Shown here: positions 23,202-35,315 of the stretch, piece by piece | Position numbering within the stretch: the stretch's first letter is position 1 | Layout of the letters: the number at the start of each line of letters is the position of its first letter | Virus record (IMG/VR): IMGVR_UViG_3300033997_000243 | Location: 186,001 to 250,000 of that record | DNA: 64,000 nucleotides | Reading direction: 5' to 3' (one strand) | Made by a program: the position numbers and the translations under genes | The notes under the pieces: generated by a model | What the model saw: the letters and a program-made list of their open reading frames with translations, nothing else | The model's database searches: none | Told to the model about the DNA's origin: nothing

Positions 23202-24725
23202 ATGGATGATATTACAATTCGTATTGAAGCATTTGAAAACAGATCTGATCTTGATGGAGCAAGAGCAAAAACTTCAGAATTCGGATCAGATGTTGCTTTC
23301 GTACAAGTAGAAGAACCAGATCCGCTTAATATAAAATTTGCGTACAATGCCCAATCAGGTGTTTTATCTTTAATCCGTGGGCCTGATGATATTATTCAGG
23401 CCACTGGTTTTCTTACGCAAAAAAGTTTGGGAACTGGAAGAAGAGGAAAGAAAGGAAAAAGAGGCAAAGACGGTCGTGATGGGAAAACTGGTTACGATGG
23501 TCGTGATGGAAAATCTGGATGTCCTGGAATTCAAGGTGTAAAAGGAAAGAAAGGACTTCCAGGTCGTGATGCTGATGATGGCCCAATTGGGCCAATAGGT
23601 AAAGCTGGTTGTGGTGGTGCTGAAGGTGAAGAAGGTGAAAGAGGAAATAAAGGAATAATCGGCAATGAAGGATCTCAAGGTTTAATGGGATCTAGTTGCA
23701 AGCAAGGGCCGGATGGCCCTGACGGTGAAAAACCTTTGGAAACAGTTTTATTTTCTGACGTTCCACCAGTAGATAATCTGCTTGCTTTTATTTGGGCAAA
23801 ACCTGTCAACAGAGATCAAGTAGATCCAACAGATCCATTGCCGCCAATAGATACTCCGTCACCTTTAAATGGAAGAGTAGATAGTTTATCAATGAATGTT
23901 CCTCCGGTCGGTGCTGGTTGGTATCAAGCAATTCTTTATTTTAAAGTGAATTCTTTAAGTGGTGGAGTTGGGCCTTTTAACTATAAATGGTCTGGTGATT
24001 TTTCGACAAACGCAAATCTTTCAGTAGTTGATACTGGAATGACATCTGCAAACTTGAATTTGAAGTGTAGAATTTATATTGCTGGAACAGAAACCAGAAA
24101 AATTACTGGTGGAATTCGTTGTACAGTAACAGACGTAGGTAACGGCAACAATCCACTACTGTTAGATGCCACTTACACATTCAACATTGTTGCGACGGCT
24201 TCTGGAGGCGGTGACAGTGGAGGCGGTGGTGGAGGCTGTATCGTTTTTGGTCAACGTGTTAATTTAGTAAATGGTGAGCAAATTCAAGTTCAATCTATTT
24301 TACACGGTGACAGTTTAATCGGCGCAAGCATAGAAAGTTTGCCGGACAGCTCTAATGGAAACTCTAAATTTTTAGATTGGTTCACTTCTGATCTTAAATC
24401 GAAAAATACAACTGTCACGGCTATGTCTGTTAAACACGGAACTTACCATAGTTACTACAAAATAAATAATGTTTTGAAAATAACTTTGGAAGAGAACATG
24501 CTTTGCTTGCGCGGAGGCTATTGGTCTTTTAGACGAGTTAAAGATCTTCGTGTTGGAGACTATTTATATCATCGAACAGAAGGTGCTAAAGAAATTCTCA
24601 GCATTGAACAAATAAGTGAACAAGTTAAGACAGTATCTTTAGATGTTGAGACATCAGACACTTACTATGTTGAAGATTATTTAGTTCACAATCTGGATGT
24701 CGGTGGGCCTGTGATTAAGAAATAG
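23202..24725 (+). CDS. collagen-like tail fibre protein with a C-terminal Hint domain
   Basis: about 33 Gly-X-Y triplets, a beta domain, poly-Gly linker, then CIVFG...LVHN. Confidence 0.8.
   Translation: MDDITIRIEAFENRSDLDGARAKTSEFGSDVAFVQVEEPDPLNIKFAYNAQSGVLSLIRGPDDIIQATGFLTQKSLGTGRRGKKGKRGKDGRDGKTGYDGRDGKSGCPGIQGVKGKKGLPGRDADDGPIGPIGKAGCGGAEGEEGERGNKGIIGNEGSQGLMGSSCKQGPDGPDGEKPLETVLFSDVPPVDNLLAFIWAKPVNRDQVDPTDPLPPIDTPSPLNGRVDSLSMNVPPVGAGWYQAILYFKVNSLSGGVGPFNYKWSGDFSTNANLSVVDTGMTSANLNLKCRIYIAGTETRKITGGIRCTVTDVGNGNNPLLLDATYTFNIVATASGGGDSGGGGGGCIVFGQRVNLVNGEQIQVQSILHGDSLIGASIESLPDSSNGNSKFLDWFTSDLKSKNTTVTAMSVKHGTYHSYYKINNVLKITLEENMLCLRGGYWSFRRVKDLRVGDYLYHRTEGAKEILSIEQISEQVKTVSLDVETSDTYYVEDYLVHNLDVGGPVIKK
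24237..24692 (+). other. Hint (intein-like) domain 1
   Basis: block A C-I-V-F-G; block F/G VSLDVE...YYV..YLVHN; residue after HN is Leu; block B His replaced (TLEE). Confidence 0.85.
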
Positions 24726-24736
24726 GTAGGTATTTT

Positions 24737-25381
24737 ATGTTGACGAAAGTTCCAACTAAATTAATTTCAGCGCCTCAAGGAACAAACGGTCAAAGTCTTG
24801 TTGTTCAGGATAAAAGAATAACAGCTCAATCTACTGCAACTCAAACAGTTTCACCTATAGAAGATTGGTTTTATGATGCAAGCGTTGGTGTTCTCACAAT
24901 TCGTTTGTTGAATGGAACAACTCAAACTTTAGGTGGATTTCCAATATTATCTGATATTCCTGAAGGCCCACAAGGAGCACAAGGAGAACCAGGAATTGAT
25001 GGAAAAGATGGTCGTGATGGTCGTGATGGTCGTGATGGCGAAGCTGGTTGTGTAGGTGCAGCTGGTGAAAAAGGTGATGACGGTGATGATGGCCGTGACG
25101 GATTAGAAGGGCCAGTTGGCCCACCAGGTATTCAAGGATGTGAAGGCCCAAGAGGAAAACGTGGGCCAAAAGGTGAAGATGGAGATCAAGGCCCACCTGG
25201 AAAACAAGGTCTTCCAGGAATTGAAGGGCCACCTGGAAAAATGGGAAAACAAGGGCCACCTGGAAGAATAAATATTATTGTAAGTGAAACTGATCCAGGT
25301 CCAAGTTTAGGTAATGGTGGAATTTGGGTTAATCCTTTAATTGGTCAGATAGATGATGATACTGATCAATTTTTTACGTAA
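24737..25381 (+). CDS. collagen-like fibre protein
   Basis: about 33 Gly-X-Y triplets; (GGTCGTGAT)3 DNA repeat; C-terminal DPG...G.IWV. Confidence 0.85.
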   Translation: MLTKVPTKLISAPQGTNGQSLVVQDKRITAQSTATQTVSPIEDWFYDASVGVLTIRLLNGTTQTLGGFPILSDIPEGPQGAQGEPGIDGKDGRDGRDGRDGEAGCVGAAGEKGDDGDDGRDGLEGPVGPPGIQGCEGPRGKRGPKGEDGDQGPPGKQGLPGIEGPPGKMGKQGPPGRINIIVSETDPGPSLGNGGIWVNPLIGQIDDDTDQFFT

Positions 25382-25393
25382 GGAATTTTTAGC

Positions 25394-25888
25394 ATGAGTG
25401 GTTTAACAAAATTAAACTTATCTATGGTAAGTCCACCACTTCAAAATGGCGGAGTTATTGCGTCAGGCCAAAGTCTCACTGTAGATCCAAAAACAATAGA
25501 TCTTTCTGAATTTAGTGGCTACTATGATCGTACACAAGGAATACTAACTTTAAATATTCCTACGATTGGAAAAATTAATATTGGAAATTTTCCAACATCT
25601 GCGGATATTGGTACAGGACGCACAGGGCCAAGTGGTCGGGATGGTGTAGCAGGTGTTGATGGTTTAATCGGTGAAACTGGTCAAAAAGGTTTGCAAGGTT
25701 GTCGTGGGCCAGAAGGCCCACAAGGTCGTCAAGGTGAACGTGGGCCGCGAGGTCTAACTGGGCCGCAAGGTGAACAAGGTATTCAAGGTATTCAAGGCAA
25801 TGACGGTCGTGATGGACGAGTTTTAATTTTTGTTCAAAGTGAAGATCCCGGAAGCGTTGGGGCTGGTGCGCTCTGGGTACGGCCCTAG
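25394..25888 (+). CDS. collagen-like fibre protein
   Basis: about 22 Gly-X-Y triplets; paralogous N- and C-terminal caps. Confidence 0.85.
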   Translation: MSGLTKLNLSMVSPPLQNGGVIASGQSLTVDPKTIDLSEFSGYYDRTQGILTLNIPTIGKINIGNFPTSADIGTGRTGPSGRDGVAGVDGLIGETGQKGLQGCRGPEGPQGRQGERGPRGLTGPQGEQGIQGIQGNDGRDGRVLIFVQSEDPGSVGAGALWVRP

Positions 25889-26909: not shown

Positions 26910-29900
26910 ATGGCTCGATTACGCATAAGATCAATTTATAACAACAAATGGCTTGATGTTTGTAATCATCCAGTGTCTTTTAGATCTCCAGACAACAGAT
27001 CTTGGATTCCATTTGACATTAAGCGTATGAGTGTGCGTGACGGTGGCAATTTAAACTGGTTAGAAATTGATTGTAAACCCGATCCACTTTTTGATGAACC
27101 GTGTGCGTTCAAACAAATTGGTAGTGTCAATTGTCCAACTGGAATTGACACTATGGAGTTGGGAAGTGGTGATGGAACTGGAAGTGATGGATTACCTTTT
27201 GATCTTATAACAGGTTATCCAGCGGGTTATGATATGCCAGATGCTGGTGACACAGGTTTTATGTTAGAACGTGCGATAGGAAGTCCTCGCGGTTTTGCAC
27301 TTAAAAGACCTGCATTAAACTATGCTCTTGAATATTACGATCCAGAAGGTGTTACAAGTAATCTAGGTCGTGGCAATTATGCGAACCCAAACTATTTGTG
27401 GGCAACTACTTTTAGTGGTGGCGCTCAAATCACTGAAACAATTTATGATCTTGGTCAAGTTGCTGGATGGTACGAAGTAATATTTGCTTCATACGACGAT
27501 GTAGGTATTAGTGTTGACGTTTATTATTTAGGTCAACGTATCGCAACAACGTGTGGTCGTATTAAAGATCGTTACAAAATTGAATTCTTTTTTGATGCAC
27601 TTGCTGGCGAAGGTGAAAGTCGTGTAATGATACGTGTTCGCGGTCAAGAAAGTACACGTTGGACATACATGGTAACTGGGCCAAAACAAATGCTCAGTGT
27701 TTATGGTTTAGATTTAGAAGATCCACTGCATCAGGTTTTAATCAGAACAGATGAATACAGTGGAACTCCTTTATTTCCTGCACCGTGCCACGCAACAGTT
27801 TTTCCTCGTGACTACAAAACAAATGATGGCAAATGGTTTTACGAATTTCACCACTATGTAGGTGAAAATGCAGATCCAAACGAACTTGCCTTAATGGTTA
27901 TTGATTACACAAGTTGGATGAACCTTGATAAATTTGAAGTTTATCACGGAGGCTTGCGTATCGGTAGCACAATGGATCCAAAAAGTTTGTTGGGAATGAT
28001 TCAATTTTTGTGGGAACCAAATCGTTTTAGTATTCCCGTTCCAGATTTAATGATTCGTGTGAGTGCTGATGTTCGTCAATACGGCGAAGATATTATGAGT
28101 TGGTACTACACATTATTCTGTCAAAACACTCCTGGATACAGAGAAAATCCTTGGGACTGTGAAACTCCTGTTGCTGGTTTAAGTAGCATGGGTCACGGTA
28201 GCACCGAAGATAACTATGACATGGATAACGGTGTTGAGAACGGAGTAGTCAGTATTAAAGCAACAGGTTACGGAGATTTTACTTATACTGTAACCGTCTT
28301 TGACATTGACGGAAAATTAGTTGCGTATACTGAAGGTAAGAGAACTACATTTACTCAATTTTTTATAAAGGCGGCTGAACATGGTGATACTCGTAAACGC
28401 ATTGCTGTACGTATTGATGCACCAATCGGAAGTTCTTGGACTTACTTTGTAGGATGTCCAGTAGAATTACTTGATATTGAATTAGATGATAAAACAATTC
28501 CAGTTTGTAATGATGAATTTGAGATCACTGTTAATGATGTGCAGTGTGTAAAAAGTGATTTTGCTACATTTACAGTTACTTCGAGCTTACCGGTTCCAAA
28601 TGATGTTCATGTAAGTGTTTCGACGCAAGACGGAACTGCGAAAAGTTCTGGCGGTGCAGGATCTGATTATGCTGGATTACCAGACATTTATGGTATTTTT
28701 CAGGATAATGATTCACCCACAGAAACCTCAAACTTCGATAGTAAGACACTGCGTTTTGGTGTACAGAATTGGCCGAATGCTAGTGTTGTATTTGATAATG
28801 GTTGGGGAAATTTGGCAAACCCTGAGCATAAAAATGCTGCGTCTACAAATGATCCTTCTCATATAATGGGAAGAAACACCAACTACTGGCAAAACTTGGA
28901 AACAAGTTCATTCGCTAATCTTTCGCCTGATGCAAAATTAGTTGTGAATGCTTGGAAACATCGTTTAGGAAATTTGAATGGCAAAAGTTGGATTATCTTA
29001 ACGGATAGTGCAGATCCTGCTGGTGATTTTTCTGAAATATGTTCCAACTTTATTCAAAGCATGATAAACATTTATGGCATGAATGTTCATGTTGTGCGTG
29101 ATGATTATACAACTCAAAATTTTACACCATATGATATTATTACGATTGCGAATAGTAGACGTTGGGGTGAAGTTGGTCAATTCAGTGCGGCTGGTGTGCA
29201 TTATATGGCGCGGGTACTTCAAGGATATAAAAGTCCTGTTGGTATTGCCATTGCAGATCAAGTTAAACAAAATCGAGTGCTTCATTGTTATTTTAGAGCG
29301 ACAAACCAACGTCTTGCCCAAAACATTTTAATTCGTGATGTAATGAATTGTTTTGTTGGTGTAAAGTTTTACTGGAACGAGCAGCTGACAAAAAATCCGA
29401 CTAATGCTGATGTTACGCTTGGTCGTCATCTTGCTCAATATCCTGATACTCCATTGTTGACAGGTATTTCTGAAGCAAAAGCTGATTCAGATTTTACTGT
29501 ATTGGATGTTCTTTATATTCCAGCACCGACAACAGTTGATCCTGATTACGTTGCGAAATCTGAAATAGTTACTATACCAACTGGGGCAACTTCAGCTCAA
29601 GTTAAGGTAACAACTTTAGATCCAAAAGCAAGCCCTATTGGGAAAAATTTCTATTTGAACTTAACTGGAACTGACAGCGGAACAATTGTAGATGCTCAAG
29701 GTATTGCAACTTTTGCTAACTCCAATACTTCACCACAACCAGTAGGTGATTTGAACTTCTCACCCTCTTATTTTACTTCACACAGTAAAAATACTTGGGA
29801 TAACTCCGGTGTTAGAGTTTATGGAAGTGCGGTTGCGTTTGCAATAGATTATTCCGGCTTTCCTACCCAAACAAATCCAGGTGGCGTAGAACAGCCTGGA

Positions 29901-30269
29901 AAAATTGCTGTTGTTGAAGCAAATGGTGGTATGGGTACGCAAGCTCAACTTAATAAATACTATACTGCTGGTGATTATCCGTATGATCCTGCACTTACTT
30001 ATGTTTATAAGTGGGAATACTCAGTTAAATTTAATGATGGAAATAGAAAGCTTACTGTTCCGTCGATAGCAACTACTTACGATGTAATGAACAGAATAAC
30101 ATCGTTTGCTGTGAATCAATCGAACGAAGAACATAGCGGATCAGGTTACTCGCTTGTTGTAGAGGCAATATTATGGATCAAAGCAAGTAATGGTGTTGAA
30201 ATGAAAAGTAACTTGGTTACAATCAATATTGTTAGTGATCCAATTTTTGCAGGTGGAAACATTCCGTAA
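26910..30269 (+). CDS. multidomain virion/fibre protein: three beta-sandwich repeats plus a split Calx-beta domain
   Basis: repeated ...V(Y/F).G..IA.T...IRV...W.Y...P modules; T.DGTAKS ... DY...V.IP.G. Confidence 0.7.
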   Translation: MARLRIRSIYNNKWLDVCNHPVSFRSPDNRSWIPFDIKRMSVRDGGNLNWLEIDCKPDPLFDEPCAFKQIGSVNCPTGIDTMELGSGDGTGSDGLPFDLITGYPAGYDMPDAGDTGFMLERAIGSPRGFALKRPALNYALEYYDPEGVTSNLGRGNYANPNYLWATTFSGGAQITETIYDLGQVAGWYEVIFASYDDVGISVDVYYLGQRIATTCGRIKDRYKIEFFFDALAGEGESRVMIRVRGQESTRWTYMVTGPKQMLSVYGLDLEDPLHQVLIRTDEYSGTPLFPAPCHATVFPRDYKTNDGKWFYEFHHYVGENADPNELALMVIDYTSWMNLDKFEVYHGGLRIGSTMDPKSLLGMIQFLWEPNRFSIPVPDLMIRVSADVRQYGEDIMSWYYTLFCQNTPGYRENPWDCETPVAGLSSMGHGSTEDNYDMDNGVENGVVSIKATGYGDFTYTVTVFDIDGKLVAYTEGKRTTFTQFFIKAAEHGDTRKRIAVRIDAPIGSSWTYFVGCPVELLDIELDDKTIPVCNDEFEITVNDVQCVKSDFATFTVTSSLPVPNDVHVSVSTQDGTAKSSGGAGSDYAGLPDIYGIFQDNDSPTETSNFDSKTLRFGVQNWPNASVVFDNGWGNLANPEHKNAASTNDPSHIMGRNTNYWQNLETSSFANLSPDAKLVVNAWKHRLGNLNGKSWIILTDSADPAGDFSEICSNFIQSMINIYGMNVHVVRDDYTTQNFTPYDIITIANSRRWGEVGQFSAAGVHYMARVLQGYKSPVGIAIADQVKQNRVLHCYFRATNQRLAQNILIRDVMNCFVGVKFYWNEQLTKNPTNADVTLGRHLAQYPDTPLLTGISEAKADSDFTVLDVLYIPAPTTVDPDYVAKSEIVTIPTGATSAQVKVTTLDPKASPIGKNFYLNLTGTDSGTIVDAQGIATFANSNTSPQPVGDLNFSPSYFTSHSKNTWDNSGVRVYGSAVAFAIDYSGFPTQTNPGGVEQPGKIAVVEANGGMGTQAQLNKYYTAGDYPYDPALTYVYKWEYSVKFNDGNRKLTVPSIATTYDVMNRITSFAVNQSNEEHSGSGYSLVVEAILWIKASNGVEMKSNLVTINIVSDPIFAGGNIP

Positions 30270-30311: not shown

Positions 30312-33300
30312 ATGGCAGGAACTCCATTCACAACTATTTACGAAAATTTAGGATCTAATGCGACAACTGTTCCTGGAATTTCGTGGAAGTTTGACCATGA
30401 ATACATTATCTACACGATTGAAAGAAACGCAGATGATGAAGTAGGTGTTGTTTATATAAATACACATGCGGCTTCTCTTCGAGCTATTGATCGTGGATTT
30501 TTAGCTGTAACGGTTGACGCATGGATTGTTCTTGATCGTCAAACAATGCAGATTAAAAGCGAATCACGTAAAGGTGATGCTTGTCCAATTTTAAAAGTTT
30601 TAGAGCGCCCGATTACAGTTGGCGTATCGGACTTTACTTCAGAAAATTGGGAAGTTTATTATTCAGGCCCTGGAGTTGTACAATTAAATATTGACTGGCC
30701 TGATGATTATGAATACGTTATCTTTGTTCACGCAACAGAGCCTCCTGGTCGCTATCCAGATCTTAAGTGGTCTATATGCGCTCACTTCTTTTGTCCGGCA
30801 GCAATGAATGCGAGTGATATAAATGGCGGTGGTTATTTAAAACCGATTGAAGGTGCGTCAGGTGTAATGATGTATCGTGGTCGGTTTTCTAGTCCAACTG
30901 GCAGACATATTCGTAGATTCGACAAAGGTGATGGTTTAATAGCGTATATACTTCGCAGAAAATTTAGAACTGATACCAAAGCAACAACTGAATTTAATAG
31001 TTGGAAGCAACACACGTTTGCACTTCCTAATGGCATACAAGCTGGTGGAAATTGGCGTGATGCTAAACCTTATGCTTGGCCTGATGATACTGAAATAATG
31101 GTAGTGTCACAAGATCCTAAAGGTAGCACAGAAATGGCTACTTCTTATTATTTCACAGATTCAAACATTCAGAATACAACTCAAATAAATTGGCGTGAAC
31201 GCGGTTTATTGTATGATGCGGGTTATGATCATTATATAGAGTTGTTGAAACCTATTTGGCAAAACCGTGGAACCAAACATATCCGTTCAAGTGATGGAAG
31301 AATTTTTGCAGCGTGGGAAAAACTACCCACGTTAGATGTTCCACCGCCAGAACCTCCACCGCCAGTTGATCCTGTAATTGATTGTCGCGCTTGCGTACCA
31401 GCTGGATCTTTGTGGGAGCAAACTGCAAGTATTGAAGTTCGTTTTGTTAAGCCTGATGATTGGCAATTACGCAATTATCGCTATGATTGGCACGGTGACA
31501 TCGGCAACGGTTCTGTGGAATTAATTGGAACCGAAGCTAATGGAAGAATTGCAAAAATTCGTTTTGTAAAAATGTTAGAACCTACCGATGATGGAATAAT
31601 GTTTCCTATCAATGTGGCGGTTACAGTTTATGATATGGATTATGCTTCGGCTGGAGTACAAGATAGTGATACAGCAATCATCGAATTTGAATTACCTTGT
31701 ATTGTAGTGGCGAATCAGCCGGATATAAGTATAGAGGATATTACTGTACTTGAGCAAGACATCAATCATGTCGTACAGGTTACAGTTTCTTTGTCTGAAC
31801 CAGCAACTGCGGAAGCACTAACAGTAGATTGGCAAACTCGTGATGGTACTGCGAAAAGCGATCTGAGTGTTAAAACACTTGCTAGGGATGATTTAGGTAA
31901 TCCATTTATAACCGTTATAGAAAGTTTAGATAGTAAAGTCAGGACTTATATAGATGGTTGTTTTCCAAAATGGTATGCTGCAAGTTTTTACGACAGATTG
32001 AATACACCTAAATTTCAAACAACATTTTTATTCACGCAAAACATAATTAACTGGTTATCCAGAAATAAAGTTGGAGGTCAAGTTTTATTATTAGGTGATA
32101 AGACGAACGATCCTTACAATGTTAAACTATCTAACGCAAATGATTTTTTCCCTGTATTCGATGCCGCAGCAACAGCCACAGGAAGAACTTTAGTTGTTGA
32201 ATATGTCTATGATATAGTTCCATCTAAAGCATATTTCGATTCCTTCGATTGCATTATTTATATAGGCAGTCACTATACAGGCGATCAAGTTAATTCACCT
32301 GAATTTATTACTGCACTTGTAGAAAGTCATTTAGGTGGAATCGGAGCAGCATTTATATCTGATCATGGTGTTGATGATATTAATGGGGCTGGTTTTTTCA
32401 AAGGCGTTAATGAAGTTTTGATCAATGCTTTTGGTATAGGACTAAAGGGCAATATAGATCGCGGATCTATGGTACTTACTGTGGAAAACGCAAAAGCTAC
32501 TTTAGGTGATCATCCATTGTGGGCCGGATTAAGCGGCCAAATAGATGCAGGATCTTCAGAAGCGTATGTTGATGCAATAGATAGTGAACCGGATTATATA
32601 AGTGGTCGAGGAACTTTAGTCTTTGCTGTCGGTGAGCAACACAAAATAATCGAGGTTACAATTGTTGGTGATACTACAATTGAGAATGACGAATATTTTG
32701 AAATAATGATCTCGAATAATAGTCGAGGTCAGATAGTAAAAAATGTTGGTCGTGTTACACTTCAAGATGATGATGCTCAACCTTGCGGTGTCACAACAGG
32801 ATCTGGTGGTACTGGTGTCACAGAAACAGTTCATAATATGGGATCTGAATCAGGCCAAGTAACAGTTGGTTTTGATATGTTCGGTGTTCCAGATATGATG
32901 GAAATTTTTTACGATGGAGTACGCGTAGCCGCAACAAGCAGAGATTTAAGTAATCCATACCCAAGTGGAACTGGACGCTATTACAATCTTCCAAATGGAA
33001 ATAAAGATCTTCCAACTGAAGTAAGTGGTGCTGGTACTCTATCATTTTATTATGAAGGGCCACCAAACAAACCTTCAACAATCATGATTCGTATGACTGG
33101 GCCAGACGGAACTGCATGGAATTACAATTTAGATTGTCCGATTCCTGTTGAGGAGCCGCCACCGCCAGCAGTAACAATTGCTGGAATAAGATTTAGAAAT
33201 TTAGATCCAGCACCTGGAGCAGGAGCAATTGCAATAGGTTATATTGATTTTATAAAATCGGATAGCACTATTTACGATTTTGGTAATGTACTGCAAGATA

Positions 33301-34226
33301 ACTATGTAAATTGTACTTTTGAGCATGGATATACAGAAGGACAACCTGTGCAATATCAAAATAGTTATAAGCCGCGTCAAGCAATTAATGGCTATCAAGA
33401 AGGATCTCAATGCAGTCACCGCGATTACTATGGCCCATTCACAAATGATGCGTACTTATTAATTCGTTTATCTCAAATGACGGATATAATAGGTTTCAAC
33501 ATGATGGATTGGCATTATTGTAATGACAATGGCGCTCCAGTGTTTCGCGCTCCAGCACTTCCATACAGCATAGATCTTTTAGATCAAAATGATAATGTGA
33601 TTTGCACACAAACAGTAACAAGTTATGTTAGTCCGGCGGCAGATACAGTTGGTTACGTTCCAATACAATTCCCTTGCGATCCTGTAATTGGTGGAACAAG
33701 TGTAGGTGGCGGAAGTGCAGATTGTTTTGCATACGGAACTTTGATAACTATGTCTGACGGTTTTGAAAAAGAAATCGAAGATATTGTTATTGGAGAAACA
33801 GTTAAAACTTTTTCCATAGAAGGATTAACTGATGCAAATGCTGAAAATCCTGTGGACTATTTAACTTGGTCAACTTACGATCTGCAAATAAAAGAATCTA
33901 CTGCCGCAGTAACATCAGTTTCTTATCACGAAACTAATCTACATCATAAGATTTGGATAGAAGGCAAAATAGATCCTATAAGGGTCACTGCGGAACATCC
34001 ATTCTTAGTTAAGTTTTCTGATAGAAATGATTGGGTATTTGATTACGCTCGTTATCTTAAAGCAGGTGATACTGTTTTAGATTCAAGTGGTCGGCAAATA
34101 AAAGTTCTATCGAATCAATTGATATACGGAAATATTAAAACTGTCCGTCTGGATGTTGAAACGCTAGATACTTATTTTGCTGGTGGAATTCTTGTACACA
34201 ACAAAGATACTACAATACAACAGTAG
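30312..34226 (+). CDS. multidomain fibre/adhesin protein with a split Calx-beta domain and a C-terminal Hint domain
   Basis: Pro linkers; ISIEDITVLE..DGTAKS / DY..G.L.FA.GE..K.I.V.I.GD...E.DE.F; ends CFAYG...LVHN. Confidence 0.8.
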   Translation: MAGTPFTTIYENLGSNATTVPGISWKFDHEYIIYTIERNADDEVGVVYINTHAASLRAIDRGFLAVTVDAWIVLDRQTMQIKSESRKGDACPILKVLERPITVGVSDFTSENWEVYYSGPGVVQLNIDWPDDYEYVIFVHATEPPGRYPDLKWSICAHFFCPAAMNASDINGGGYLKPIEGASGVMMYRGRFSSPTGRHIRRFDKGDGLIAYILRRKFRTDTKATTEFNSWKQHTFALPNGIQAGGNWRDAKPYAWPDDTEIMVVSQDPKGSTEMATSYYFTDSNIQNTTQINWRERGLLYDAGYDHYIELLKPIWQNRGTKHIRSSDGRIFAAWEKLPTLDVPPPEPPPPVDPVIDCRACVPAGSLWEQTASIEVRFVKPDDWQLRNYRYDWHGDIGNGSVELIGTEANGRIAKIRFVKMLEPTDDGIMFPINVAVTVYDMDYASAGVQDSDTAIIEFELPCIVVANQPDISIEDITVLEQDINHVVQVTVSLSEPATAEALTVDWQTRDGTAKSDLSVKTLARDDLGNPFITVIESLDSKVRTYIDGCFPKWYAASFYDRLNTPKFQTTFLFTQNIINWLSRNKVGGQVLLLGDKTNDPYNVKLSNANDFFPVFDAAATATGRTLVVEYVYDIVPSKAYFDSFDCIIYIGSHYTGDQVNSPEFITALVESHLGGIGAAFISDHGVDDINGAGFFKGVNEVLINAFGIGLKGNIDRGSMVLTVENAKATLGDHPLWAGLSGQIDAGSSEAYVDAIDSEPDYISGRGTLVFAVGEQHKIIEVTIVGDTTIENDEYFEIMISNNSRGQIVKNVGRVTLQDDDAQPCGVTTGSGGTGVTETVHNMGSESGQVTVGFDMFGVPDMMEIFYDGVRVAATSRDLSNPYPSGTGRYYNLPNGNKDLPTEVSGAGTLSFYYEGPPNKPSTIMIRMTGPDGTAWNYNLDCPIPVEEPPPPAVTIAGIRFRNLDPAPGAGAIAIGYIDFIKSDSTIYDFGNVLQDNYVNCTFEHGYTEGQPVQYQNSYKPRQAINGYQEGSQCSHRDYYGPFTNDAYLLIRLSQMTDIIGFNMMDWHYCNDNGAPVFRAPALPYSIDLLDQNDNVICTQTVTSYVSPAADTVGYVPIQFPCDPVIGGTSVGGGSADCFAYGTLITMSDGFEKEIEDIVIGETVKTFSIEGLTDANAENPVDYLTWSTYDLQIKESTAAVTSVSYHETNLHHKIWIEGKIDPIRVTAEHPFLVKFSDRNDWVFDYARYLKAGDTVLDSSGRQIKVLSNQLIYGNIKTVRLDVETLDTYFAGGILVHNKDTTIQQ
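33723..34202 (+). other. Hint (intein-like) domain 2
   Basis: block A CFAYGT.I.M.DG..K.IEDI..G; block B TAEHPF; block G LVHN; residue after HN is Lys. Confidence 0.9.
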
Positions 34227-34323
34227 TGTTTTTAAAATGGCAAAACCTGCTAATTTAAAGTTATAGACAAAACTTCTTCTGTTTCATTGTATTCAGAAGA
34301 AGTTTGTGTACTGGGAGTTTAAA

Positions 34324-34545
34324 ATGCCAAAGGCAGTTGTTTTGAGAGTCAGGGACGTTAAAAACGTCCTTGATCCTTTTCATATAAAGAATTTTCATTT
34401 AGGTGGCTGGCGTGTTCGTCATGAAAACAAATGGATCAGAATGGTTCCAGAAAATACTCTGATTAAAAATCCAGATCATGATCCGGCTGTACACGCACCA
34501 GATGATACTGAATTTCCGTTATATACACAGGTGGTATCAGAATGA
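34324..34545 (+). CDS. small virion-associated protein (start MPKAV)
   Basis: GGGAG SD; R..N.W pattern like the N-terminus of 26910. Confidence 0.55.
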   Translation: MPKAVVLRVRDVKNVLDPFHIKNFHLGGWRVRHENKWIRMVPENTLIKNPDHDPAVHAPDDTEFPLYTQVVSE

Positions 34546-35315
34546 TAACTAGACTACCTTTAGCAATGATCAACGCTGGATCAACAAGTTTAGCAGGACA
34601 AAATGTTACAGTTGTTCAGCCGGGAGTATTAGCTGCACAAGATCCGTCTGCAACTGTTCAACCTGCTGTTATACAAGGAACGTATGACGCGGATAGTGGA
34701 ACAGTTACAATAGTCAATGCTGATAATTCGATAGTTTTAATTTCTGGTTTTCCAACAATAAGAAGTTTACCAACTGGACAACGTGGGCCAGAAGGTAAAC
34801 AAGGTATTTCTGGAGTAGCAGGAAGAAATGGTCGTGATGGTCGTCCTGGAGAACAAGGTTGTCCTGGAGTAAAAGGTGATCGTGGCTTGCGAGGCCCAAT
34901 TGGGCCAGAAGGCCCACGAGGGCCGCAAGGAGAAATCGGCCCCAAAGGTGACAAAGGTGACAAAGGTGACAAAGGTGATGCAGGTATTGATGGCCTTGAA
35001 CCAGAATATGTAAAGACAAGTCGTGGAGCATCTATTTATTTACAAAGAAGCGGTGGAACAATTCAAAGTGGATTTTTTGAAAATGCTCTACAAGACAGAA
35101 CAATAACTTTACTGTTTCCGAGAAATTTAATAAACGGTGTTGTAAGTATTGTATTGTTCTTTAAGAATCCAAGTAGCTACCAAGCTCTGAATTATGAAAT
35201 AGGTGAATATTTCTACGATGATTTAGAAATTGGTGGTGTAACAATAACTCTTAAAGGAACTCCACCTGCACAGCTTGAGCCTTGGCAGTTCTGGTGGTTT
35301 GTAATGGGCGATTAA
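34542..35315 (+). CDS. collagen-like fibre protein with a C-terminal globular domain
   Basis: about 25 Gly-X-Y triplets; (AAAGGTGAC)3 repeat; shared N-cap. Confidence 0.85.
   Translation: MITRLPLAMINAGSTSLAGQNVTVVQPGVLAAQDPSATVQPAVIQGTYDADSGTVTIVNADNSIVLISGFPTIRSLPTGQRGPEGKQGISGVAGRNGRDGRPGEQGCPGVKGDRGLRGPIGPEGPRGPQGEIGPKGDKGDKGDKGDAGIDGLEPEYVKTSRGASIYLQRSGGTIQSGFFENALQDRTITLLFPRNLINGVVSIVLFFKNPSSYQALNYEIGEYFYDDLEIGGVTITLKGTPPAQLEPWQFWWFVMGD

What the first reader, a model, noticed from the sequence alone, without database searches (positions are those of the whole stretch)
33690..34226. Second, apparently intact Hint domain terminating the 1304-aa adhesin
Seen: GGGSAD-CFAYG...TAEH...VHN-KDTTIQQ. 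It shares an insert (S(I)E(G/S)L.D...(Y/F)L.W...DL) and KTV.LDVET.DTY with Hint 1, so the two are paralogues. The residue after HN is Lys and there is no endonuclease, so it is not a mobile intein. Two fibre genes keeping the same C-terminal autoprotease suggests a domesticated fibre maturation or ligation system.
Basis: partly seen in the sequence, partly recalled or inferred. Interest (0 to 1): 0.7.

Follow-up and report, generated by a model that had tools for sequence, protein, structure and literature searches.

The report
Self-cleaving Hint cap on phage fibre
The last 167 residues of a 1304-residue tail-fibre-like protein of a 320-kb jumbo phage form an intact intein-like (Hint) self-processing domain; it is not a mobile intein, belongs to a large unstudied family that ends many phage tail proteins, and most likely cuts itself off the finished fibre.

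Summary
ORF 30312-34226 ends in a 160-residue Hint domain (Cys1138 to Asn1297). It follows a Gly-rich linker and is followed by only 7 residues. The fold is confident (pLDDT 90). The nearest solved relatives are bacterial intein-like (BIL) domains, not canonical inteins. An exhaustive search found 1717 relatives. Of the best 150 cluster representatives, 99 carry the domain at the extreme C-terminus, with tails of 0-20 residues. In that set Cys1 is kept in 100/105 and the block-B His in 102/105. No Cys/Ser/Thr nucleophile is conserved after His-Asn, and the upstream linker is Gly-rich. The domain is under purifying selection (dN/dS 0.085). Phage NCTB's orthologue of the neighbouring Hint-less 1119-residue protein carries a Hint, and the Hint-less versions end exactly at its poly-Gly linker. 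That fits a removable cassette. The best reading is self-removal through a thioester at Asp1137-Cys1138 during fibre maturation. Thioester-driven ligation, as in BUBL BIL2, is not excluded. The "shared insert" is family-wide, and the two Hints are not close paralogues. Hint 1 also has Glu in place of the block-B His. Cleavage itself is untested. I found no paper on this architecture.

The parts
30312..34226 (+). Gene for the 1304-residue tail-fibre/adhesin-like virion protein (passenger plus Hint)
   Evidence: ORF. Whole-gene dN/dS is 0.061 against syntenic relative L004. It lies in a tail module with a baseplate wedge protein, tail proteins and collagen-like fibres.
32589..32771 (+). Calx-beta domain (residues 760-820)
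   Evidence: Pfam PF03160, E 9.6e-10, 39 bits against a cut-off of 27.
33147..33689 (+). Variable region of the passenger just before the linker (residues 946-1126); all-beta, fold undetermined
   Evidence: Orthologues P0002, P0019 and P0004 align only up to about residue 945. ESM features point to a discoidin-like domain, a lead only. The AF2 model has pLDDT 53 and found no fold match.
33690..33722 (+). Gly-rich linker GGTSVGGGSAD ending at the predicted scissile bond Asp1137|Cys1138
   Evidence: In the family, positions -1, -2 and -3 are Gly in 56, 40 and 52 of 105 sequences. The linker has pLDDT below 50 in the model.
33723..34202 (+). Hint (BIL-A-like) domain, Cys1138 to Asn1297
   Evidence: Pfam; AF2 pLDDT 90; Foldseek top hits 6Y75/6TMM BIL2 and 2LWY BIL; family profile against PDB gives E 1.3e-23 and 2.7e-22 to the same chains; dN/dS 0.085.
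33987..33998 (+). Block B motif TAEH (Thr1226, His1229)
   Evidence: In the family Thr is kept in 94 (plus 9 Ser) and His in 102 of 105.
34197..34202 (+). Block G His1296-Asn1297
   Evidence: It is invariant in alignments A1 and A2 and also present in the 9 single-domain hits that were not selected on it.
34203..34226 (+). Seven-residue tail KDTTIQQ plus stop; the +1 residue is Lys, not a nucleophile
   Evidence: Family +1 residues are K27, A20, L7, N6, S6, V6, F5, T4 of 105, and tails run 0-20 residues.
23202..24725 (+). 507-residue collagen-like fibre protein carrying 'Hint 1' (Cys346 nt 24237; TLEEN nt 24483; Asn497 nt 24690; 10-residue tail)
   Evidence: The block-B His is replaced by Glu here and in L004, L005 and P0133. 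dN/dS of the Hint part is 0.022.
26910..30269 (+). Hint-less 1119-residue protein whose orthologue in phage NCTB (gp132) ends in a Hint
   Evidence: BLASTP gives 39% identity over 678 residues, E 5e-146. This protein and its L004 and L005 orthologues end at the position of NCTB's poly-Gly linker before Cys1.

Best explanation
The feature is a catalytically intact Hint domain of the bacterial-intein-like (BIL, A-type / PT-HINT-like) kind. It is fused by a flexible Gly-rich linker to the C-terminal end of a tail-fibre/adhesin-like protein of a 319.5-kb jumbo myophage of the Y3/Yoloswag/NCTB lineage. The proposed mechanism is as follows, and each step is inferred from family chemistry, not shown here. 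After folding, Thr1226/His1229 strain the Asp1137-Cys1138 peptide bond. Cys1138 performs an N-to-S acyl shift, which leaves the passenger attached by a thioester. Because there is no +1 Cys/Ser/Thr and only a 7-residue tail, splicing of two functional exteins is impossible. The thioester is resolved mainly by hydrolysis. That releases a mature 1137-residue fibre protein ending in ...GGGSAD and a 167-residue Hint by-product. Asn1297 cyclisation may also shed the heptapeptide. The domain therefore acts as a self-removing C-terminal pro-domain that is present during folding and assembly and absent from the finished fibre. It is functionally analogous to, but unrelated in fold to, the S74 intramolecular-chaperone domains of tailspikes. 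It is a portable cassette found on many unrelated phage tail proteins.
For: The Hint fold and its motifs are present. The nearest solved relatives by sequence profile and by structure are BIL domains, ahead of canonical inteins and Hedgehog. The terminal architecture is the rule in this family: 99 of the best 150 representatives end 0-20 residues after HN. The residues needed for thioester formation are conserved (Cys1 100/105, block-B Thr 94 and His 102 of 105), while the +1 position is not a nucleophile. Purifying selection on the domain is about as strong as on the passenger (dN/dS 0.085 against 0.061 for the whole gene, at dS about 1). The cassette moves between passengers: NCTB gp132 is the orthologue of the window's Hint-less 1119-residue protein, and the Hint-less versions stop at the aligned poly-Gly linker, where cleavage would leave the NCTB protein. 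Family passengers include collagen, Calx-beta, Ig/fn3, BACON and tail-collar domains. One sits after an NlpC/P60 tail gene, and several sit in syntenic jumbo-phage tail modules. The genome holds only these two Hint domains. BIL A-type domains are reported to cleave at their N- or C-terminal ends (PMC7765530).
Against: No cleavage was observed, so everything about the chemistry is inferred. The strict conservation of His-Asn, which self-removal at the N-terminal junction does not need, is unexplained by simple hydrolysis. Two family members end exactly at HN, where Asn cyclisation cannot matter. I could not read virion proteomics of the cultured relatives (Y3, Yoloswag); the Y3 paper is not held. 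Retention of the domain in virions is therefore not excluded. Hint 1 lacks the block-B His yet is even more constrained (omega 0.022), so the domain may have a role beyond catalysis. The set of 105 was chosen on a terminal HN, which biases the HN count, although not the Cys1 or block-B counts.
Confidence: 0.55

Rival explanations
1. Thioester-driven ligation. The Hint generates a C-terminal thioester on the fibre, and an amine resolves it. The amine could be Lys1298 at +1, the alpha-amine of the released tail, a lysine of another virion protein, or a nucleophile on the host surface. The result is a covalent (iso)peptide link instead of a free C-terminus.
For: The closest solved structures are BIL domains. 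The structure providers of BIL2 of the Tetrahymena BUBL1 locus report that it forms a Lys-epsilon isopeptide and conjugates its upstream ubiquitin-like domain to substrates without ATP (PMC8616854). Lys is the commonest +1 residue in the family (27/105) and is nearly universal at junctions of tandem arrays, VHN-K-GG-C. The Gly-rich -1 to -3 positions resemble a ubiquitin-like GG end. Ligation would explain why His-Asn is invariant.
Against: The +1 residue is highly variable (Ala 20, Leu 7, Val 6, Phe 5) and the tails are unconserved between orthologues: KDTTIQQ here, NDGSPINKD in L005, SENTETPKEPIG in P0004. No acceptor protein was identified. Hint-less orthologues of the neighbouring protein function with a plain C-terminus. 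The review read states that A-type BILs cleave with Asn but cannot ligate their flanks.
Confidence: 0.2
2. The Hint is retained in the virion as a structural or binding domain at the fibre tip, and the catalytic-looking residues are kept for folding reasons; there is little or no processing.
For: Hint 1 has lost the block-B His yet is under very strong purifying selection. RefSeq labels the Yoloswag and Y3 homologues 'virion structural protein'. Intein fusion precursors can be stable, which I state from general knowledge.
Against: Cys1 and block-B Thr/His are conserved at 90-97% across very divergent passengers, which is hard to explain without catalysis. A flexible poly-Gly tether suits a leaving group better than a load-bearing tip. 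Hint-less orthologues end at the linker.
Confidence: 0.15
3. A decaying or stranded mobile mini-intein, a selfish element that has lost its endonuclease and its C-extein.
For: There is sequence similarity to genuine mini-inteins, for example the helicase intein of Vibrio phage PS65A.1 at 29% identity, and to many intein structures.
Against: It has no endonuclease, no +1 nucleophile and no C-extein, and it is not inserted in a conserved site. dN/dS is 0.085. The same terminal architecture occurs in about 100 independent clusters. It is closer to BIL domains than to inteins.
Confidence: 0.03
4. A pre-toxin HINT of a polymorphic-toxin-like protein that releases a C-terminal effector.
For: The best Pfam match is PT-HINT, and 51 of 92 family members match PT-HINT.
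Against: Only 7 residues follow the domain. The score of 27.1 bits is below the curated cut-off of 27.7. No toxin or immunity genes lie nearby; the context is a phage tail module.
Confidence: 0.02

Closest known systems
A-type bacterial intein-like (BIL) domains (Amitai et al. 2003; Dassa et al. 2004; solved example 2LWY from Clostridium thermocellum)
   Same: Both have the Hint fold, Cys1, block-B TxxH and a C-terminal His-Asn, lack a +1 nucleophile, and sit next to the variable part of a non-conserved surface protein. 2LWY is the best sequence match in the PDB (E 0.0031 with the single sequence, 2.7e-22 with the family profile) and a top fold match (TMt 0.84).
   Different: The described BILs are bacterial and mostly internal, with a real C-terminal flank. 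Here the domain is the end of the protein (tail of 0-20 residues) and the carriers are phage tail proteins. The domain also has a family-specific insert of about 25 residues (I.GL...W) between blocks A and B.
BIL2 of the Tetrahymena thermophila BUBL1 locus (6Y75, 6TMM)
   Same: It is the top hit by profile (E 1.3e-23) and by structure (TMt 0.83). Both have a Gly-rich junction before Cys1.
   Different: BIL2 lies between two ubiquitin-like domains and transfers the upstream one onto lysines. Here there is no ubiquitin-like passenger and no downstream domain. Only the chemistry may be shared.
Pfam PT-HINT (PF07591), the pre-toxin HINT of polymorphic toxins
   Same: It is the best Pfam model for this domain and for 51 of 92 relatives.
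   Different: No toxin domain follows, and this protein scores 27.1 bits against a cut-off of 27.7.
Peptidase S74 intramolecular-chaperone domains of tailspikes and fibres (endosialidase, T5 pb1)
   Same: The logic is the same: a C-terminal domain of a phage fibre that cuts itself off after assembly (PMC7824862; PMC4690869 abstract).
   Different: The fold and chemistry are unrelated (a Ser-Lys dyad and an obligate trimer). No S74 match was found here. A trimer prediction for the Hint gave no answer.
Hedgehog C-terminal autoprocessing domain (1AT0)
   Same: Both are terminal Hints that cleave at their own N-terminus through a thioester that an external nucleophile resolves. The fold match has TMt 0.77.
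   Different: Hedgehog lacks His-Asn and carries a sterol-recognition region after the Hint. Here the Hint ends with HN plus 7 residues.

Membership tests
HINT superfamily | Hint beta-fold | tested here: met
   The AF2 model has pLDDT 90 and pTM 0.85. Foldseek probability is 1.00 to BIL, intein and Hedgehog structures.
HINT superfamily | N-terminal nucleophile (Cys/Ser) and block-B Thr-x-x-His | tested here: met
   Cys1138 and T1226-A-E-H1229 are present and conserved in relatives.
Canonical (mobile) intein | +1 Cys/Ser/Thr on a C-extein, so that two extein halves of a host protein are spliced | tested here: not met
   The +1 residue is Lys and only 7 residues follow. The family +1 position is mostly K, A, L, N or V.
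Canonical (mobile) intein | Homing endonuclease domain, or insertion at a conserved site of a conserved protein | tested here: not met
   The domain is 160 residues with no endonuclease model hit. It follows a variable tip region.
A-type BIL domain | Conserved C-terminal His-Asn without a conserved downstream nucleophile | tested here: met
A-type BIL domain | Closer in sequence to BILs than to inteins or Hog domains | tested here: met
   Family profile against PDB: BIL chains at E 1e-23 to 3e-22, the best intein at 7e-16, and Hedgehog not listed.
A-type BIL domain | Location in variable regions of non-conserved secreted or surface proteins | tested here: met
   The passenger region 946-1126 is not conserved among orthologues, and passengers across the family are heterogeneous.
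A-type BIL domain | Demonstrated autocleavage at the N- and/or C-terminal junction | not testable with these tools
   This needs protein expression and mass spectrometry.
Pfam PT-HINT (PF07591) | Score at or above the curated gathering threshold | tested here: not met
   27.1 bits against 27.7. This is marginal: 51 of 92 relatives match at E<=1e-3.
Pfam PT-HINT (PF07591) | A C-terminal toxin domain downstream of the Hint | tested here: not met
   The stop codon lies 7 codons after Asn1297.
Hedgehog Hog domain | Sterol/adduct-recognition region after the Hint | tested here: not met
   There is no sequence beyond the 7-residue tail.
Peptidase S74 intramolecular chaperone | S74 fold with a Ser-Lys dyad | tested here: not met
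   No Pfam match, and the fold is Hint.

The most novel reading that the evidence does not exclude
The terminal Hint is a single-use ligase. It converts the fibre's C-terminus into a thioester that couples covalently to a lysine of another virion component, for example to anchor the hair-like fibres of this phage lineage, or to a nucleophile on the host surface. That would be a BUBL-like, ATP-independent protein conjugation system used to build a virus particle or to attach it.
Probability: 0.15. Interest if true: 0.85.

Novelty: new variant of a known kind. Interest (0 to 1): 0.55.

Why it matters
If the cleavage is real, phages have a second, widespread kind of self-removing C-terminal pro-domain on their fibres, built on intein chemistry and distinct from the S74 chaperone. 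This matters for annotating and engineering receptor-binding proteins, because the mature C-terminus is not the one encoded. It also matters for interpreting virion proteomes of jumbo 'hairy' phages, whose hair proteins remain unidentified (PMC6143709). And it offers a large natural library of compact, endonuclease-free, Cys1 Hint domains with a Gly-tolerant -1 position. If the thioester is used for ligation, it would be a new route to covalent virion assembly.

Tried and rejected
1. A homotrimer prediction of the Hint, meant to test a trimerising chaperone role like that of S74, returned 'no answer' and is not evidence either way.

2. I tried to identify the passenger region 946-1137. ESM features suggested a discoidin/F5_F8_type_C domain at 0.84-0.87, which is a lead only. 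The AF2 model built on 3 sequences reached pLDDT 53. Foldseek found nothing at E<=1e-3. The fold stays undetermined.

3. The search for related loci with the family alignment failed because no stretch was conserved enough. With the single sequence it found only one 98% relative in IMG/VR.

4. Megablast of the gene against GenBank phages found no match.

5. Literature searches found inteins in phage terminases, polymerases and helicases, but nothing on terminal Hint domains of tail fibres. The Y3 paper is not held.

6. I rejected the idea that the conserved Hint DNA serves as a recombination handle for swapping tips. At 30-45% protein identity between Hints there is no usable nucleotide homology.

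7. I rejected the mobile-intein and pre-toxin readings; see the rival explanations.

Full report
**What is there.** The window is part of a 319,518-bp virus record with direct terminal repeats. Its GC content is 37.6%.

Positions 14.6-40 kb encode a contractile-tail module. It holds a baseplate wedge protein, a 1551-residue tail protein, several collagen-like fibre proteins and two very large proteins of 1119 and 1304 residues.

The gene order and protein families match the jumbo 'hairy' myophages Yoloswag, Y3 and AD1 and the uncultured phage NCTB. The proteins that form the hairs in that group are still unidentified (PMC6143709).

ORF 30312..34226 ends in this order:
- linker GGTSVGGGSAD
- Cys1138
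- block B TAEH, residues 1226-1229
- VHN, with Asn1297
- tail KDTTIQQ, then the stop codon

**Is it a Hint domain?** Yes.
- Pfam gives PT-HINT at E 5.6e-6 (27.1 bits, just under the 27.7 cut-off), plus the N-terminal Hom_end_hint block.
- An AlphaFold2 model built on 101 relatives has pLDDT 90 and pTM 0.85. Only the linker and the tail are disordered.
- Foldseek places it next to BIL2 of the Tetrahymena BUBL1 locus and the Clostridium thermocellum BIL domain (TM 0.83-0.84 on the target). Mini-inteins and Hedgehog follow.
- A profile of the family finds the same BIL chains at E 1e-23 and 3e-22, ahead of every canonical intein.
- The domain is 160 residues long, with no endonuclease.

**The family.** HMMER read all 1.84 billion representatives and found 1717 relatives at E<=1e-3.
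- Of the best 150, 99 end with His-Asn 0-20 residues before the stop. Total protein lengths run from 151 to 3399 residues.
- In an alignment of 105 such ends, Cys1 is present in 100, block-B Thr in 94 (plus 9 Ser) and block-B His in 102.
- The residue after Asn is K27, A20, L7, N6, S6, V6, F5 or T4, so no splicing nucleophile is conserved.
- Positions -1 to -3 are mostly Gly.
- The exceptions are N-truncated fragments, two proteins without Cys1, the free-standing NCTB gp135, and the Hint 1 lineage.
- His-Asn is also present in the nine single-domain hits with longer tails, which I had not selected on HN.
- Passenger parts are heterogeneous and mostly unannotated. Where recognisable they are collagen, Calx-beta, BACON, Ig/fn3 and tail-collar domains, and they match PHROG tail-fibre families.
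- Genomic contexts include syntenic jumbo-phage tail modules and a gene that follows an NlpC/P60 tail gene.

**Selection and mobility.** I compared the window with the syntenic 329-kb relative L004. The Hint has dN/dS 0.085 at dS about 1, against 0.061 for the whole gene. Hint 1 has 0.022. Both domains are therefore maintained by selection.

The cassette is not tied to one passenger:
- NCTB gp132 (1304 residues, Hint-terminated) is the orthologue of the window's Hint-less 1119-residue protein (39% over 678 residues, E 5e-146).
- With the window's own 1304-residue protein, NCTB gp132 shares little beyond the Hint and a short Calx-like segment.
- The Hint-less versions in the window, L004 and L005 stop exactly where NCTB gp132 has its poly-Gly linker before Cys1. 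This is the end that cleavage would produce in NCTB.
- Orthologues of the 1304-residue protein (P0151, P0002, P0019, P0004) all keep a terminal Hint. The roughly 180 residues before it are not conserved between them.
- Hint 1 is only about the 62nd closest of 100 sequences to Hint 2. The two are family members, not recent duplicates.

**Mechanism.** Two things are shown: the residues for an N-to-S acyl shift at the passenger-Hint junction are present and conserved, and splicing of two exteins is impossible. The rest is inferred: a thioester forms at Asp1137-Cys1138 and is resolved.

I favour hydrolysis, meaning self-removal of a C-terminal pro-domain (0.55), for three reasons:
- the domain is always terminal;
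- the tether is flexible;
- Hint-less orthologues end at the linker.

The main rival is aminolysis (0.2). The providers of the BIL2 structure report Lys-epsilon isopeptide formation and substrate conjugation (PMC8616854). Lys is the commonest +1 residue. Ligation would also explain the invariant His-Asn. Against it, tails and +1 residues vary freely and no acceptor is known.

The other readings are weaker:
- retention as an uncleaved tip domain, 0.15;
- a decaying mobile intein, 0.03;
- a pre-toxin Hint, 0.02.

**Comparison with what is known.** By its tested features the domain is an A-type BIL-like Hint. GenBank and UniProt already label its phage homologues as 'intein domain' or 'Hint domain' proteins. 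What I did not find described in the literature available here is:
- the terminal architecture as a large, coherent family on phage tail proteins;
- its conservation pattern;
- the evidence that it is a removable cassette.

I therefore rate it a new variant of a known kind, of moderate interest, with a higher-interest ligation reading still open.

**Things that led nowhere.** These were the trimer prediction, the fold of the region before the linker, the wider IMG/VR retrieval, and access to the Y3 paper.

Noticed in passing
P0003, P0006, P0009, P0015, P0063, P0091 (hits): About 40 of the best 150 hits are proteins with 2-7 Hint domains placed back to back, with junctions of the form VHN-K-G(G)-C. 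Several start with signal-peptide-like N-termini. Related ones carry a Tim44-like PF04280 C-terminal domain. Such tandem Hint arrays look like a separate, odd architecture.
   Followed up: partly
window 34200-34545: The last 26 nt of the gene, the intergenic region and a 73-residue ORF (34324-34545) are almost identical to L004 and L008, although dS is about 1 inside the big gene. The region contains a hairpin at 34270-34305 (dG -18.6 kcal/mol, z -3.6) that has a compensatory T>A/A>T pair in L004.
   Followed up: partly
window 24237-24692 (Hint 1): Hint 1 and its orthologues in L004, L005 and P0133 have Glu in place of the otherwise near-invariant block-B His. They keep Cys1 and His-Asn, and dN/dS is 0.022. 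This points to either compensated catalysis or a changed role.
   Followed up: partly
L003:744-1205 (phage NCTB gp135): This is a free-standing 153-residue Hint-like ORF next to the Hint-terminated collagen fibre gene. It lacks Cys1 and the block-B Thr/His but ends in VHN-KVD. The window has no counterpart.
   Followed up: no
alignment A1 / family profile A2: Pfam AXH (ataxin-1/HBP1 module, PF08517) matches 13 of 92 terminal-Hint proteins, down to E 2.4e-36. Ataxin-1 AXH chains match the family profile at E about 2e-4. This is either a cross-hit or a real AXH-Hint relationship.
   Followed up: no
window 26910-30269 and 30312-34226: The 1119- and 1304-residue proteins share a repeated module of about 110 residues that ends in ...MIR(V/M)...W.Y...CP. 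It occurs several times in the 1119-residue protein and once (residues 828-943) in the 1304-residue one, and it is part of phrog_26008. Its function is unknown.
   Followed up: no
window 23202-25888 and 34542-35315: Four separate collagen-repeat fibre genes (507, 214, 164 and 257 residues) lie in one tail module. They are candidates for the hair-like appendages of this phage lineage.
   Followed up: no
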